A DNA stretch of 64,000 bases from Polymyxa betae A26-41 (GCA_003693705.1 RBZT01000339.1:42088-106087); one strand, 5' to 3'; counted from the first letter of the stretch, positions 32,965 to 39,800 are shown. The notes: generated by a model not told the origin, from the sequence alone. Made by a program: numbers and translations.

Positions 32965-34549
32965 ATGTCCATACAAGACTATGAGTTGAATGATCTTATT
33001 GGCAAAGGCTCTTATGGTGCCGTGTACAAAGCCAAACGAAAGTCTGATAGGTTGGATGTGGTCATTAAGCAAGTTGTTGGAACTGGAAAAAACCATGCTC
33101 GAGCGGAAGCTCGCGTCCTGGCCGATTTAGCTCATCCAACTATCGTCAAATACTACGACACATTTGAAGATCAGTCGGAGAAGATTTTGTACTTGGTGAT
33201 GGAATATTGTGATGGAGGCGACCTATCTGGTCTGATTCATTCGTCGGCCAATGCCCAGGGCTTCAATCGCAGACGACCTGGACTGCCTGAAAGCACCGTC
33301 CTTGATTATTTGGCACAAATGGCTCTGGCATTACATTATCTACACTCCCAGAACTTGATGCATCGTGATCTGAAAAGCCCAAACGTTTTTCTTCAAGATG
33401 AATGTCGTCGGATCAAACTGGGCGATTTTGGCGTCTCGACGTTTTTGGAAACGTCTATGGATTTTGCAGAGACATGCATTGGGACGCCATTCTATATGAG
33501 TCCTGAGCTGTTCAACAACAATCCTTGTAATAATCATCATCGAAACTCTTTCTCTGCTTTGTAACCGCGGTTTGTGCAGATAACTTTAAGAGCGACATCT
33601 GGGCGCTTGGCTGCATTACTTACGAAATGCTAACCGGGAATCATGCTTTCCATTCGGAATCGCTATCAGCATTATCAGATCGGGTGGTGAAAGGGAATTA
33701 CAACCTTCCACGGAAAGGCAGCCCAAACCTGTTGCAATTGCTCAAGCGGATGCTATCAGTAAATCCAAATAAGAGGCCCACAGCTGCTCATATACTCAAA
33801 TCGCCTTTACTGAATCGGCCATTGGTATGTCTTCTGCTCTCAACAAACGTGATCCTGTTAATTGCTGATGCAGCGCTCTTTCCTGGATCGATACCTGTCG
33901 ATCGCTTGCAGGATTCAGCAAAAGGACGAAATCGACAGCTTATTGAAGCAGATAACGGCCTTGGGATTGAACAGCTTGATTTGTGTGAATAAATGCTCAT
34001 TGCAAGAGATATTGATATCTCAGCAAGAATCAAGAGACGATCCATTTGGAGAACCAAATGACGATGCTTTCATTGAGAACTTAGAGCCAAATGAATCCGA
34101 TTACGAAGAGGTGCCGGCTTCAGAGAATCCATTCTCTGAAACAATGGTAATAAATCTGCTTCAATCCTCAATTGTGAGCTGAATGGTGATAGCCATCAGC
34201 GAACACAATAATCGATTGCATCTGGTCGTCAGTTCCACCATACGACGCTGTCAAATCATGTTCGAATGTAGTGCTGCCTGGAAATCTGTCCATACGAAGA
34301 TCGATGCTTCAAAGGTCGTCATTGCTGGCTCTATCTCTCCTACCATCCTAACAAATTCTTAGGCAATGCAAGCAAATTCTGGGCGACGACAAATTCGAAA
34401 GGTGTTTCGCCCTGGTTGCCTCCGAGAAACCGTCGACATTCTTCTCTGCCGATCTCAATCGTCTGCTGGAAACTGAACTCGGTCCAGGATGGCTACAAGC
34501 ATGCCATTTAGTCGAGCAGATATTGTGGATAGATGCAAATAAACCCTAA
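32965..34549 (+). CDS. NIMA-related (NEK) Ser/Thr kinase
   Basis: IGKGSYG, MEYCDGGDL, HRDLKSPNVFL, KLGDFG, CIGTPFYMSPE, KSDIWALGC; 3' exons predicted. Confidence 0.9.
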
Positions 34550-34557
34550 AACCCTAG
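34541..34557 (+). promoter_or_regulatory. Telo-box-like AAACCCTAAAACCCTAG between NEK and the kinesin-like gene
   Basis: Seen in the sequence; overlaps the predicted NEK stop and lies about 65 bp before the next ATG; regulatory role is inferred. Confidence 0.5.
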
Positions 34558-34620
34558 CGCCAGTCAGTTTCCCCGCGCCGAACGCAGTGCTGCCTAAGTG
34601 CAGTAGCACCGCGTCGCGTA

Positions 34621-36839
34621 ATGGAAAATGACGTCGACGAGGCGGCGCCCGCTTCTATGGTGAGACTTGTGCGCTGCCTAGTCGGTGAATTCTCCAGAAC
34701 GTTTTCTGTAACCCCCACTGAGACAATGACGGAACCCTGTCCTATCTCACTGCTCGACTATCCACATTCGTCGTCATTTCGTTATCGCGCTCGTCTTGCA
34801 GGCATGGACCCTGGTGAGCAACCCACGCCCCGAGCGCTATCGCCGCTGTCGTCTTCGACGTCGTCGTTGCTGTCGAGCGCGTCCTCGTCCGAGGAACCGT
34901 CGCCCCGGCAATGGGAATCGATCACGTATGGCCCTGTTAAAGCCTTCATTAAGGTTCGCCGGCTCTCTACTGAAGAGAAGCGCGCGCGCTGCCAACAAGC
35001 TGTATTTGTTTCCCCTGAAACCCGATCGGTTAATGTTCAGTCCCCTTCCGGAGTGGCTCAAACTGTATGGAATCTGCATATGTTCATCAAAAGGCTCACC
35101 TAATCGTGCCTTCTAGTTCAAAAGCTTTGATGCTGTCTTTGATGCTTCTGACGACCCATTTGACCCTGCTGATTTATATTCGCAAACAACAGCGCCTTTA
35201 GTACAAGAACTGTTTGACGATGCACCCTCTGTTGGATTGCTCGTTGCTTCAGGAGATAGGAATTCAGGAAAGTCTTGTACAATGCAAGGCGGTGGTCAAG
35301 ACATCGGCATTTTCCGTCGCGTTCTTCTCGACGTATTCGAACGATCACAAGCCTCAGCAAGAAAACATCAGTCTATATCTATCGCATTGCTCGGCTATTA
35401 CGATAATAAGGTAATTTTTATTGCAATTGGAAAGTTCAAAGCTTTATTGCACATCAGATATTCGATCTTCTGTCTCCTGGATCTGCTGGAAGCCCACAGA
35501 GGCTAATGAGAATTGGATCAATTTGTTCTCAAAGAATCCAGCATACGAAAGTCCAAAATGCCAAGAGCGCCATCACTATGCTAAAATCTGGTTTGCTGCA
35601 TAGAAACAACGATCCATGCATGTCGTTCGGCCATCTTCTATTTTCTGTTCGCCTTGCAACTACACGCCGTGGTAAAACTACATACTCGCAGCTGGTGCTT
35701 TGCGATTTGTACTCGCCACGACAATCAAAGTGCAAAGAAGCTCTGAACTTTAACATGTCTTTGGTGAACTTAAATCAATGTATTGAGGCGAAGTTACATA
35801 ATTATGTGAACCCCAGAGACAAGAAACCGGTCCCAATTCGTCAATCCAGGTTCACCCGTCTATTGCGCCCTAACCTTATTGGTTCTGGCACCACTGTCAA
35901 AATCCTGCATTTAGCTCCTTGTGTGGGAGACATTCATACCACATTGCAATCATTGACTTGCTCAACTTCCTCTTCCTCTAGCAATGTCATGCTTTTGCCA
36001 GGAAGTTTATCTGAATCGGAACTTACGAGTCCCATCTACTTGAAGTGCAAGGATTGCAAAGACATGCAATCCGCCTCATCTCCGATGTTGCCCGAGAACG
36101 TTATTACCTCAAGCCAAAACGGTGTTTTGCAGTCGACGACTCGCAAAATGCTACGCTTTCTAGAGCCCGACATAAACGATAATGGCGAACTTGAGCTCAA
36201 AGATATTGCTTCCGAAAACGGCATGCCTCCTTATGAGTCATCTGATTGCCTGAATCTTGCCCAGACATACCTTGAGGCTAAGGACCCAATTGCAAAGTCG
36301 CAGGTCTTAGATAAAGCAGCTTGCTTATGTGATCAAAGCTACGTTCGAGATCTTCTCAATGTCGTCGCAGACGAGATGGTAAATTTTGCTCCAACGTAAT
36401 CATTTGAAAAAAGCCTTTTGAGATCAATGTATCAACTAACTCACATGCAGTGCGATTCTTCCTCCTTTTAAACATGACGACATACCGCACCCTGGAAGGT
36501 GGCTTCCGGTCCCTGTTTCTCAATGGGTTCCAGACAGGTATTTATGTCATGATCCTTACTGCCGCTCATTTAACATTGATAGGCATTCTGTTGTCTGTTT
36601 ATACTGCCATAACAGATTTGGGTTCTTTAAAAGGCGTCACCATTGCAGGTAACTCCAACTAAACAGAAAAAAGCATTAGCAGCGCAGCCAACTGTCTTCT
36701 TAGGTCCTGCGGATTGGTATATTGCTATGAATGTTGCAAGCCCTTTCCAGTACCGTGGTCTGTGAATCCAGAGCGAGTTTGCAGATTTTGTATTGACGCA
36801 AGAAGCCGTATTGGGACATTTATTTTCTCGCATAGATAA
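34621..36839 (+). CDS. Degenerate kinesin motor domain fused to a C-terminal FYVE zinc finger
   Basis: GT-AG introns 35065-35116, 35411-35457, 36396-36450, 36538-36582 and 36649-36703 give one open frame: VKAFIKVRRL, SFDAVF, GDRNSGKSCTMQG, IFDLL, SLVNLNQCI, VPIRQSRFTRLL, then WVPD..C..C...F...RRHHCRSCG.VYC..CC...RVC..C. Confidence 0.85.
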
Positions 36840-36882
36840 CCAGCTAAATATTGTGATTGTTATAAAGAATGCATTGTTATTA

Positions 36883-39800
36883 CTAAAGATATAGACTCCC
36901 GGCAAATGGAATCCCTCGGTGAATGGAACGGCGGGCTTGTTCAAATTGGGCTTGAAGGGTTTCATTTCCAATCGAATGCGCTCCTTCAGCTAATTGTAAC
37001 AAAACCTATTATTATCTCAGCTTGCAAGAACTGGAATCTGAATGAAAGATACCTCTTGCAATCTTCGTAAATTCCGAATAATGGACCCTTCAAAGACAGT
37101 TTTGTACTTCCCACAAAGCTCTGAGAAACTGGTGCCACGGCACCAATCTAACACAATGGCGGCCATTGTTCCAGAAAATTGGTTAACATAATCTTCAACC
37201 TACAAAGCAGATATCAACAGGTTCGGCTAGGAAGACTTCGGATAAACGTTTCTTTACATTAACTGGCATGTCGCATTCGGCAGTCAACTCAGCGACGTTG
37301 CGAGCTGTCGATTTTAATGATGCTGAGTCCTGACTTAGCACGCGCAAGACTGTAAAACGAATTTCCTTACCAAATTGATTCTCAATCTCTTTCGGAACAG
37401 AGGGTCCTCGCTTCTCTTGATCCAGCTGTAGACAGCTGACTAAAGCAGCCGTTTGTGCTGGATCTAAATCTTGGAATATGCCATCGACCTAAAATGAGCA
37501 TAAGGCTACATAGAGAACGCAAAGAAACTGATCACATACAATCAACTCGGTGGAGACAATTTCGTCAAGCGAATCGATTTCACAAGCAATCCGTCCTTTC
37601 TGAAGTACAAGACCTTGACTGTCAACATACAGAAGTTTTCTAAGCAGCCTTAGACGATTCTTCAATTCAATTTTGAACAGATTCAGACTGTTGTTTAAAA
37701 CACCATCGTTCAGGTCTATTCAACTTTGAACAGAAAGCTGTGAGTCCTCAAGGAAGTTACCGTTGATTTCAGATTGTAACCGAAGATAGTTCTCAAATAA
37801 AGCCATTTCGAATTCTTCCGGCATGGGAAGCGAAGTTAGAATCGAGACCGCATTATCAATATTCTTTGAACAATCAGTATCTCAGCACTACCATAATGCT
37901 TATTAACCTTCTGATGCTTTAAGTATTCAATTTCCTTGTCAGAAGGCATGTGCATGTTATTAACAGGGTCTAAGTCAATAGCACATCCGGAAGAAATAAC
38001 TTCTTTCATTCTTTTCATAAGTGTTTTCCTGACAGCAGCAGGGACCAAATCATCAGGGACGAACATCTACAAATCACGAATTAAAGTTAAGCACTTTCCA
38101 TGTCAAAACAGACTCTGGCCGAAGATATCTTTTTAACAGCATCAAAGTGAAATCTGACAACATGAGCTTCACTGGAACTCGACGGTTGGACATCGCAACC
38201 GTCCTCATCAGTTATGCGGCAATTGACGAGAACGTCAACACAGTATTTAGAAGGTGCAAACAGCTTCTGAGATCCCATTACAATCCCTAATGAAAAATTA
38301 ATATGCTGACAGGGAATTGCAATACAGCACAGCACCCCATCCAAAATCGCGGTCATCGTCGGTTTTCTGATCGCTCTAGCAGCAACGTCAAAATTGGATT
38401 TCTCTTGGTGAAATGCCATACTTTACTGCCGATGTAGACAACACGACCCGGCTGGATAAACCGGAGCGAAATCTCGGGATTATGAATATATTGCTCAACA
38501 GCCTGACGACTTTCCTCGATCGCCTTTTTAAACCGGCAATACTTGTCGATGCTATCAAATCGATTCGGATCTCTGATACAAAAAATTAGAATGCTTGAGT
38601 GTCAGAAAATCAATAACAACTTTTCCGTTAATTTCTTCTTGATTTGTTCAACTTCTTGAGAAAGATGATCGATGTTGGATACAGATTGGTTTTGCTGTAT
38701 TCCATCAAGATAGACAAGAAAACTATTGGAGCCATTCAAAACCAAATGGTGGCTTTAGAATTCGACGACCTATTTCTTAACAGCAGTTCAGGGTTGTGCA
38801 ACTCCGATCGCGACATGTTTAGAATTGAGTTGTACGTTAATCGAAATTGCGAGATCTGAAACAAATCGATCAGTAACGGGCTTAAATGGACGAATCATTT
38901 TTCCATTACCAGTGGATCAGTGTGGATATCGACGAGAGATTCTATTGCTTCTTTCTTTTGATCTTGGTCTATCATCATAATTGACAACCCGAATGGATCT
39001 TTGCCTCTTCTTCCAGCTCGTCCTGTTAACCCGGTATCAGAAAAAAACGAGGGGTACAAGAAAGGCTACCGCTCATCTGAATATATTCGCTTGAAGTGAT
39101 AGAACGTCGATTCTCGCCATCGAACTTATCAAGAGCGGTGAATATAACAGTTTTGGCAGGCATATTTACTCCTATTGCTCATATGAGACGTTTTCTGTTT
39201 TGGTAAAAAGTTCCGACCTAAAGCAAACGTTTCCGTTGCACACAAAACCTTCACCAGCGACTCCTAGTGGGAGACCAGATCAACAGTGTCCTTAACAATT
39301 ACAAATCAGTACCTGAAACAGTAATTCCACGATTTCCTTTAAAATCGGTAGCATTCCACCATGATGCACCCCAATTCCTGATCAACGTAAATCAAATATA
39401 TATTCATACTCGCAAGCAAGCACAAGAGACCAAGTTTTAGCAAAGGAAGCAGATTTAAAGCTTGAGGAAGCTGAGCACTCAGTTAACGGAAAGAATCAGC
39501 AGATGGCATTGTTACATTTCGGTCCTCTTCTGATAAAGATTCAAGTGCGTTATCGAACACAGTTTGGACCAAGTTTTGTTCTTCAGGCGTGTTCATACAC
39601 AGATTGCCCAGCTTCATAGCATTGGATTCACATTCCCGCCGGCTGAAACTAAACAAAATGGCGGGATGGTAATTCTGCTGGACAAGCATGAAAAGCAGAC
39701 GTTGGATTCCACTGGAGCTCAATATGAGCTCTACGAGAATGTTAAAATCTTTCAACTCACTTGTTTTTGGCTCGTTCTTTGACAGCAGCTGCCCTCGTGA

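What the first reader, a model, noticed from the sequence alone, without database searches (positions are those of the whole stretch)
34621..36839. Hidden pseudo-kinesin-FYVE fusion: candidate non-motile microtubule-to-PI3P tether
Seen: five canonical GT-AG introns of 45-55 nt join four fragments of the ORF track into one frame. The N-terminal half follows the kinesin motor scaffold (VKAFIKVRR, FDAVF, P-loop GDRNSGKS at ~35252-35275, IFDLL, helix-4 SLVNLNQCI, L12/helix-5 VPIRQSRFTRLL). Switch I NxxSSRSH reads NNDPCMSFGH (~35602-35634) and switch II DLAGSE reads DLYSPR (35704-35721). No obvious coiled-coil stalk follows. The C-terminus is a complete FYVE finger (WVPD, RRHHCR, RVC, eight Cys) split by two introns, so it is absent from the ORF track. 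Established: switch I and II are required for ATP hydrolysis and stepping; FYVE domains bind PI3P; catalytically impaired kinesin-fold proteins such as Vik1/Cik1, Smy1 and Costal2 act as tethers or regulators. Inference: a motor-dead adaptor linking endosomal or PI3P membranes to microtubules. The TMQG and L..CI motifs hint at a kinesin-6 origin and hence a role in cytokinesis or cleavage.
Basis: partly seen in the sequence, partly recalled or inferred. Interest (0 to 1): 0.85.

Follow-up and report, generated by a model that had tools for sequence, protein, structure and literature searches.

The report
Motor-dead kinesin fused to FYVE finger
A root parasite of sugar beet (almost certainly Polymyxa betae) carries a real, conserved gene that joins a kinesin motor domain with worn-out ATP-hydrolysis motifs to an intact PI3P-binding FYVE finger, so it probably anchors endosome-type membranes to microtubules instead of moving them.

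Summary
Six exons (34621-36839, + strand) are joined by five GT-AG introns of 52, 47, 55, 45 and 55 nt. Pfam places Kinesin on exons 2-3 and FYVE on exons 5-6, collinear with both profiles.

The genome matches the Polymyxa betae draft (1,001 contigs, 27.09 Mb). A syntenic ortholog exists in Plasmodiophora brassicae (PBRA_003741, 574 aa). There, motor, linker and the first half of the FYVE finger lie in one exon, so the fusion needs no splicing. Both of its introns sit at positions shared with this gene.

Both species have lost switch I, switch II, RxRP and the alpha6/neck-linker consensus, and both have shortened L9 and L11. Both keep the P-loop, alpha4, L12/alpha5 and every FYVE PI3P and zinc ligand. 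The linker is not conserved. This pattern fits a selected pseudo-motor, not a decaying gene.

One other kinesin-FYVE protein turned up, in an unnamed compact eukaryote, and its motifs are nearly intact.

Not shown: transcription (four RNA runs gave no reads), microtubule binding, PI3P binding and a cytokinesis role. Kinesin-6 ancestry is plausible but unresolved.

The P. brassicae ortholog is deposited but unstudied. I class this as a new variant of a known kind.

The parts
34541..34549 (+). Telomere-like box AAACCCTAA, 72 nt upstream of the start codon; likely a promoter-proximal element
   Evidence: 8 copies in the window against 0.36 expected; none of 100 shuffles reached 8. Its function is inferred.
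34621..35064 (+). Exon 1: unconserved Ser/Pro-rich N-terminus, then the first motor strands (VKAFIKVRR, in which the RxRP motif reads KVRR)
   Evidence: BLASTP aligns residues 100-147 to P0001 residues 30-80. 34621 is the first start codon after an in-frame stop.
35065..35116 (+). Intron 1 (52 nt, GT-AG, phase 0), at the same position as P. brassicae intron 1
35117..35410 (+). Exon 2: N-terminal half of the motor, with an intact Walker A motif GDRNSGKS at 35252-35275
   Evidence: Pfam Kinesin 41.5 bits; 41% identity to P0001 residues 82-174.
35411..35457 (+). Intron 2 (47 nt, GT-AG, phase 0)
   Evidence: the flanking exons abut on the ortholog.
35458..35970 (+). Exon 3, motor part: switch I remnant 35605-35634, switch II remnant 35704-35721, shortened L11, alpha4, and L12/alpha5 (VPIRQSRFTRLL) at 35830-35865
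   Evidence: Pfam Kinesin 58.9 bits; 36% identity to P0001 residues 185-342; alignment A1.
35971..36395 (+). Exon 3, linker part: about 60 disordered Ser-rich residues, then a predicted three-helix module; the sequence is not conserved
   Evidence: Shuffle test: 733 of 1000 shuffles score at least as high. Single-sequence AF2 gives three helices at pLDDT 64-75.
36396..36450 (+). Intron 3 (55 nt, GT-AG, phase 2, ACTAAC-like branch site): the junction that fuses the motor gene body to the FYVE exons
   Evidence: It is the only donor/acceptor pair that puts the FYVE finger in frame. In the ortholog the equivalent region is continuous exon. No RNA evidence.
36451..36537 (+). Exon 4: spacer and the WVPD motif (36524-36535)
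36538..36582 (+). Intron 4 (45 nt, GT-AG, phase 2)
   Evidence: When spliced, the spacing from D to the first Cys equals that of the ortholog (5 residues).
36583..36648 (+). Exon 5: first CxxC, a hydrophobic turret (FGFF), and RRHHC(R) at 36632-36648
   Evidence: Pfam FYVE profile 9-27; 65% identity to the ortholog.
36649..36703 (+). Intron 5 (55 nt, GT-AG, phase 2), splitting the Arg codon of RRHHCR at the same position as P. brassicae intron 2
36704..36839 (+). Exon 6: the remaining Zn ligands, RVC at 36774-36782, stop codon at 36837-36839
   Evidence: Pfam FYVE profile 29-64; 56% identity to the ortholog.
37020..37166 (-). 3' end of a convergent MTR4/SKI2-type helicase gene (DSHCT domain): the synteny anchor
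   Evidence: Pfam DSHCT 38.1 bits. The P. brassicae ortholog has the same convergent neighbour.

Best explanation
This is one functional gene of a plasmodiophorid, almost certainly Polymyxa betae. Its product runs: an unconserved N-terminus; a kinesin motor fold that can probably still hold nucleotide (P-loop kept) but cannot hydrolyse ATP or step; a poorly conserved disordered linker with a small helical module; and a canonical PI3P-binding FYVE finger. The most likely mechanism has two parts. The FYVE finger docks on PI3P-rich endosomal, vacuolar or autophagic membrane. The motor remnant binds the microtubule lattice statically through its preserved alpha4/L12/alpha5 face. The protein would then anchor or position those membranes on microtubules without transporting them. 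It probably derives from an active kinesin-FYVE transport motor. Shown here: gene structure, domains, motif states, orthology and conservation. Inferred: loss of ATPase, microtubule binding, PI3P binding and the tether role.
For: Domains are collinear across the exons. Exons abut on the ortholog P0001. Synteny holds, with a convergent DSHCT helicase in both species. Both P. brassicae introns sit at positions shared with this gene, and residues 82-536 there form one exon spanning motor to FYVE. ORF calls from independent public assemblies show the same continuous exon. Alignment A1 shows that both species lack SSRSH, DxxGxE, RxRP and the alpha6/neck-linker consensus. Both share deletions of about 5-8 residues in L9 and L11, so the loss predates the split of the two genera. 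Both keep GxxxxGKS, alpha4 and VP[IF]RQS[KR][LF]TRL. The FYVE finger keeps WxxD, RRHHCR, RVC and eight Cys at 56-65% identity. The linker shows no significant similarity, so constraint acts on the two domains. The AF2 model of the ortholog has the motor mostly above pLDDT 90 and the FYVE finger at about 95. The fold matches microtubule-bound kinesin motors, with target-normalised TM-scores of 0.83-0.88 for the MKLP2 chains. An intact-motif kinesin-FYVE (P0118) exists elsewhere. The AU test does not reject a single clade of P0118 with the plasmodiophorid proteins (p 0.63). From established knowledge: switch I Arg and switch II Gly/Glu mutants of kinesin-1 are ATPase-dead and bind microtubules tightly.
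Against: There is no transcript evidence: four RNA runs with the same species label gave zero reads, which is no test. The motor-to-FYVE junction in this species rests on one predicted intron. A second plausible donor at 36379 would give a product that stops six codons later, without FYVE. Microtubule and PI3P binding are untested. Smy1p is a degenerate kinesin that works without microtubules (PMC2141741). L11, part of the microtubule-sensing interface, is shortened. One P. brassicae assembly carries a model with a frameshifted FYVE tail (P0178). No obvious dimerising coiled coil is present, and single FYVE fingers often bind weakly.
Confidence: 0.55

Rival explanations
1. PI3P-membrane scaffold that no longer uses microtubules. 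The kinesin fold survives only as a protein-protein interaction module, as in Smy1p, and the FYVE finger places it on endosomes.
For: Four nucleotide-handling motifs are lost, L11 is shortened and the alpha6/neck consensus is missing. Smy1p is the precedent (PMC2141741).
Against: The best-conserved motor segments between the two species are exactly the microtubule-facing alpha4 and L12/alpha5, including the Arg of the VPxR motif.
Confidence: 0.2
2. Regulatory or partner subunit. The dead head pairs with an active kinesin, as Vik1/Cik1 pair with Kar3, or it retains an atypical slow ATPase. PI3P cargo would then still be moved.
For: The P-loop is intact in both species. A 41-residue helix is predicted in the P. 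brassicae linker. The genome has about 20 other kinesin genes available as partners.
Against: That helix has pLDDT of only 56-68 and has no counterpart in this species. The switch II Glu is Arg in both species.
Confidence: 0.15
3. Not one functional gene: either a decaying pseudogene, or a truncated kinesin-like gene ending at 36399 followed by untranslated FYVE relics.
For: There is no RNA evidence. The protein is absent from the protein libraries. The alternative donor at 36379 gives an early stop.
Against: About 655 codons stay open across six exons with five intact GT-AG pairs. All FYVE ligands are intact, yet the FYVE frame has no start codon of its own. The fused architecture, the synteny and two intron positions are conserved in another genus at about 37% protein identity.
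Confidence: 0.07

Closest known systems
Plasmodiophora brassicae PBRA_003741 (CEO94928.1, UniProt A0A0G4II92; P0001)
   Same: It is the syntenic ortholog. It has the same kinesin-linker-FYVE order, the same lost motifs and shortened loops, the same kept P-loop, microtubule face and FYVE ligands, and two shared intron positions.
   Different: It has 574 aa against about 655, two introns against five, and an unrelated linker sequence. Switch I still keeps RSH there, while switch II has also lost its Asp. It is deposited only as 'FYVE-type domain-containing protein', and no paper mentions it.
P0118, an 886-aa kinesin-FYVE from an unnamed compact eukaryote (public run SRR23031613, locus L018)
   Same: N-terminal motor and C-terminal FYVE. 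It shares the unusual GKS (not GKT) P-loop ending, the lack of a long L6 insert, and an LPW-type stretch before RVC.
   Different: Its motifs are nearly intact (LRIRPF, SSRGH, DMAGVE; Pfam 287 bits) and it has a longer coiled region, so it is presumably an active PI3P-cargo motor. A sister relationship is not rejected, but it is not shown either.
KIF16B (kinesin-3 with a PI3P-binding PX domain)
   Same: A kinesin whose own tail reads PI3P on early endosomes (established knowledge; see PMC10662051).
   Different: KIF16B is an active processive motor, belongs to a different kinesin family, and uses PX rather than FYVE.
Non-motile kinesins: KIF26A/B (kinesin-11), KIF7/Costal2, Smy1p, Vik1/Cik1
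   Same: A kinesin fold kept for binding or scaffolding, with motor activity lost (PMC10585591, PMC5881503, PMC2141741).
   Different: They are unrelated lineages and none carries a lipid-binding finger. Vik1 lacks the nucleotide site entirely, whereas here the P-loop is kept.
FYCO1 and similar FYVE adaptors
   Same: They link PI3P membranes to the microtubule system (established knowledge).
   Different: They recruit a separate kinesin. Here the microtubule-binding fold and the FYVE finger are in one polypeptide.

Membership tests
Kinesin superfamily (PF00225 motor fold) | Match to the Pfam Kinesin profile above the curated cut-off | tested here: met
   Exon 2 scores 41.5 bits and exon 3 scores 58.9 bits against a cut-off of 29.3, and the two are collinear. 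The ortholog scores 121 bits.
Kinesin superfamily (PF00225 motor fold) | Walker A / P-loop GxxxxGK[ST] | tested here: met
   GDRNSGKS at 35252-35275.
Catalytically active kinesin | Switch I NxxSSRSH | tested here: not met
   The aligned stretch reads DPCMSFGH, with the Arg replaced by Phe, and L9 is shortened.
Catalytically active kinesin | Switch II DxxGxE | tested here: not met
   It reads DLYSPR: Gly is replaced by Ser and Glu by Arg. Glu is also Arg in P. brassicae.
Catalytically active kinesin | RxRP adenine-pocket motif and the alpha6/neck-linker consensus | tested here: not met
   RxRP reads KVRR. The end of alpha6 and the neck region show no consensus in either species.
Kinesin microtubule interface | alpha4 (xNxSL..L..CI) and L12/alpha5 (VPxRxSxxTRLL) | tested here: met
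   FNMSLVNLNQCI and VPIRQSRFTRLL are conserved with the ortholog. Actual binding is not testable here.
FYVE zinc finger (PF01363), PI3P-binding type | WxxD, R[RK]HHCR and RVC motifs plus eight Zn-ligand Cys | tested here: met
   WVPD, RRHHCR and RVC are present, with CxxC four times (the exon 6 frame was corrected). The Pfam pieces score 19.4 and 18.7 bits, each below the 27.8 cut-off but collinear. The ortholog scores 54 bits.
Kinesin-6 (MKLP1/MKLP2, KIF20/KIF23) | Long insertion in loop L6 | tested here: not met
   There is no insert in this gene, in P0001 or in P0118, whereas the KIF20-like P0002 and P0004 have one.
Kinesin-6 (MKLP1/MKLP2, KIF20/KIF23) | Phylogenetic grouping with named kinesin-6 motors | tested here: inconclusive
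   The nearest intact hits are KIF20-like and the top Foldseek hit is MKLP2. But phmmer against PDB puts kinesin-8 Kip3 first, and the trees leave the position open.

The most novel reading that the evidence does not exclude
Plasmodiophorids turned an ancestral PI3P-vesicle transport motor, a kinesin-FYVE that is still intact in at least one other eukaryote, into a static microtubule-to-endosome anchor. They did this by losing hydrolysis and neck mechanics while keeping the microtubule face and the lipid finger. This would be a natural motor-to-tether conversion with a built-in membrane address. It might be used when the multinucleate plasmodium is cleaved into zoospores or resting spores.
Probability: 0.3. 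Interest if true: 0.65.

Novelty: new variant of a known kind. Interest (0 to 1): 0.55.

Why it matters
Non-motile kinesins and PI3P-reading kinesins are each known. A kinesin fold with dead switches joined directly to a FYVE finger has not been described in the open literature searched. The protein would make a compact, easily testable natural model of how a motor becomes a tether. It also marks a lineage-specific piece of membrane-cytoskeleton wiring in the Phytomyxea, a group of obligate plant root parasites whose cell biology is barely known. Finally, it shows that intron-split small domains are missed by ORF-level scans of this unannotated draft genome.

Tried and rejected
1. RNA evidence: four RNA runs with the same species label (three studies) gave zero reads on 34200-37300, so this was no test.

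2. A word-indexed protein search with exon 3 found nothing, because full-length kin fall outside its length window.

3. The same tool with P0001 returned only P0001 itself, because kinesin words saturated the candidate list. With the tail of P0118 it returned only ordinary FYVE proteins.

4. The Atlas look-alike search gave only generic kinesin clusters, all below 0.9.

5. Metagenome scans: the tool's own patterns found no relative. My VPxRQS-type pattern found 11 contigs, all intron-rich ordinary kinesins from one project, not orthologs.

6. Linker conservation between the two species was tested and rejected.

7. Motor trees (105 and 48 rows) did not finish the careful search within the time limit. 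The quick trees leave the family position open.

8. No second kinesin-FYVE gene lies in this genome: FYVE and kinesin hits never sit close together on one strand.

9. All work on this gene was done exon by exon, by reference. The natural full-length ortholog P0001 stood in for whole-protein searches and folding.

Full report
**What is in the sequence.** Reading 34300-37200 and the ORF list gives a six-exon model on the + strand.
- Exons: E1 34621-35064, E2 35117-35410, E3 35458-36395, E4 36451-36537, E5 36583-36648, E6 36704-36839 (stop at 36837-39).
- The five introns are 52, 47, 55, 45 and 55 nt. All are GT..AG, with phases 0, 0, 2, 2, 2.
- Intron 3 has an ACTAAC-like branch site about 10 nt before its AG.

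**Domain scan, exon by exon.**
- Kinesin (PF00225) scores 41.5 bits on E2 (profile 44-133) and 58.9 bits on E3 (profile 138-320). Both exceed the 29.3-bit cut-off and continue one another.
- FYVE (PF01363) matches E5 (profile 9-27) and E6 (profile 29-64). E4 ends in WVPD.
- Behind the stop at 36397 the FYVE frame has no ATG.
- The next gene downstream is convergent on the minus strand (DSHCT helicase). The FYVE exons therefore cannot belong to a neighbour or start on their own.
- A six-frame FYVE scan of the whole genome does not report this locus, and the protein is in neither protein library. It really is hidden from ORF-level annotation.

**Organism.** The assembly has 27,085,814 bases in 1001 contigs. 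The Polymyxa betae draft genome is described as 1,001 contigs, 27,085,946 bp and 45.1% GC (PMC6328671). The best relative of the gene is from Plasmodiophora brassicae. I take the window to be P. betae, the plasmodiophorid vector of rhizomania.

**Ortholog and proof of the fusion.**
- An exhaustive HMMER search with E3 against 1.84 billion representatives gave one outstanding hit, P0001 (78 bits, 37% identity; the next hit scores 55 bits).
- P0001 is P. brassicae PBRA_003741 / A0A0G4II92, 574 aa, with Pfam Kinesin plus FYVE.
- Its locus has the same convergent MTR4/DSHCT helicase downstream.
- The six exon translations align to P0001 residues 30-80, 82-174, 185-342, 505-514, 520-536 and 538-571. 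The conserved junctions abut.
- Mapping P0001 onto its own DNA shows only two introns: one after K81 and one inside RRHHC|R. These are the positions of introns 1 and 5 here.
- Residues 82-536 of P0001 (motor, linker and the first half of FYVE) are one exon. ORF calls from independent assemblies read the same continuous stretch. In the sister genus the fusion therefore needs no splicing.
- In this window only the 36396 donor with the 36450 acceptor keeps FYVE in frame.

**State of the motor (alignment A1).** Compared with intact relatives (P0002, P0004, P0014, P0118), both plasmodiophorid proteins show the following.

| Element | Intact form | This window | P. brassicae |
|---|---|---|---|
| P-loop | GxxxxGK[ST] | GDRNSGKS (kept) | GASNSGKS (kept) |
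| RxRP | RxRP | KVRR (lost) | RVRA (lost) |
| Switch I | SSRSH | CMSFGH (lost) | PPRRSH (lost) |
| Switch II | DLAGSE | DLYSPR (lost) | LLGSLR (lost) |

- The switch II Glu is Arg in both species.
- Both share deletions of about 5-8 residues in L9 and L11, and neither shows an alpha6/neck-linker consensus.
- Both keep alpha4 and L12/alpha5 (VPIRQSRFTRLL here, VPFRQSKLTRLF in P. brassicae).
- The shared deletions date the degeneration to before the Polymyxa/Plasmodiophora split.
- Since that split, the motor core (36-41% identity) and the FYVE finger (56-65%) have stayed conserved. The linker has diverged beyond recognition: 733 of 1000 shuffles score as well.
- This pattern is what a selected pseudo-enzyme shows, not a pseudogene.
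- From established kinesin mutagenesis (my knowledge, not tested here), loss of the switch I Arg and the switch II Gly/Glu abolishes hydrolysis and tends to give tight, nucleotide-insensitive microtubule binding.

**FYVE finger.** WVPD, RRHHCR, RVC and four CxxC pairs are present, along with a hydrophobic turret (FGFF here, FWFLL in P. brassicae). The ortholog's FYVE matches endofin, EEA1 and RUFY1 chains in the PDB.

**Structure.**
- AF2 on P0001 with a 34-row alignment gives a confident motor (mostly pLDDT above 90) and FYVE finger (about 95).
- It shows disorder at 348-381 and 479-503, a 41-residue helix of modest confidence at 380-420, and a three-helix module at 428-477.
- Foldseek puts microtubule-bound MKLP2 first, followed closely by KIF14, Kip3 and kinesin-8B.
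- A single-sequence model of this window's linker is weak. It shows about 60 disordered residues, then three helices, and no long helix.
- The statement 'no coiled-coil stalk' holds for this species.

**Relatives and origin.**
- Among the 150 best hits, only P0001 and P0118 carry a FYVE signature.
- P0118 (886 aa) lies on a gene-dense, intronless 9.8-kb contig from public run SRR23031613.
- It has nearly intact motifs (Pfam 287 bits), a coiled region and a C-terminal FYVE finger.
- It shares the unusual GKS ending of the P-loop and the lack of an L6 insert.
- The trees place it near the plasmodiophorid clade, but without support.
- An AU test does not reject one clade. The constrained tree is 3.2 log-likelihood units better, with p 0.63.
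- Kinesin-6 ancestry is plausible. P0002's best PDB match is KIF20A by 40 bits. P0014 and a cluster-mate of P0132 are named KIF20.
- It is not established. PDB phmmer of P0001 puts Kip3 first, and the L6 insert is absent.
- The P. betae genome shows no clearly kinesin-6-like paralog and no second kinesin-FYVE.

**What is missing.**
- Four RNA runs gave no reads at all, which is no test of expression.
- No paper mentions the ortholog or a kinesin-FYVE fusion.
- Metagenome scans added no orthologs.

**Method note.** Exons were handled one by one, by reference. The natural full-length ortholog was used for whole-protein work.

**Verdict.** The microtubule-to-PI3P tether role is the best mechanistic inference but is untested. 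The kinesin-6 and cytokinesis ideas remain open.

Noticed in passing
window 13647-63180 (8 sites; 34541-34549 lies upstream of this gene): The telomere-like box AAACCCTAA occurs 8 times against 0.36 expected. One copy sits 72 nt before this gene's ATG, which fits a promoter-proximal element already noted by another reader.
   Followed up: partly
L016:9706-9804 (P. brassicae, between PBRA_003741 and the MTR4-like gene): A second, 82%-identical copy of the last FYVE exon lies about 1.9 kb downstream of the ortholog. It has an in-frame stop, so it looks like a decaying exon duplicate.
   Followed up: no
P0178 (P. brassicae XXQ31067.1, 594 aa): Another P. brassicae assembly models the ortholog with a frameshifted tail after CCSTW, losing RVC and the last CxxC. 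This is either an indel error in the assembly or a real strain polymorphism.
   Followed up: partly
window 36538-36582: Intron 4 is 45 nt long and free of stops in frame. Its retention would insert 15 residues between WVPD and the first CxxC without truncating the protein (read).
   Followed up: no
window 36379-36450: A second good donor (GTAAAT at 36379) paired with the same acceptor would end the protein six codons later, without FYVE. This could be a FYVE-less isoform (read).
   Followed up: no
L018 (logan:SRR23031613 contig, 9.8 kb): This is a very compact eukaryotic contig: seven intronless genes with spacers of about 40-500 bp, mostly under 100 bp, including an apparently active kinesin-FYVE (P0118).
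   Followed up: partly
G000 whole genome: With a KIF20-like query, no clearly kinesin-6-type paralog stands out in this genome. The best matches are general kinesins at 37-43% identity.
   Followed up: partly
window 32965-34182: The upstream neighbour is a protein kinase gene split by short introns (Pkinase 149 bits on its first ORF). The P. brassicae ortholog has a different upstream neighbour (PI31_Prot_N), so synteny holds only on the downstream side.
   Followed up: no
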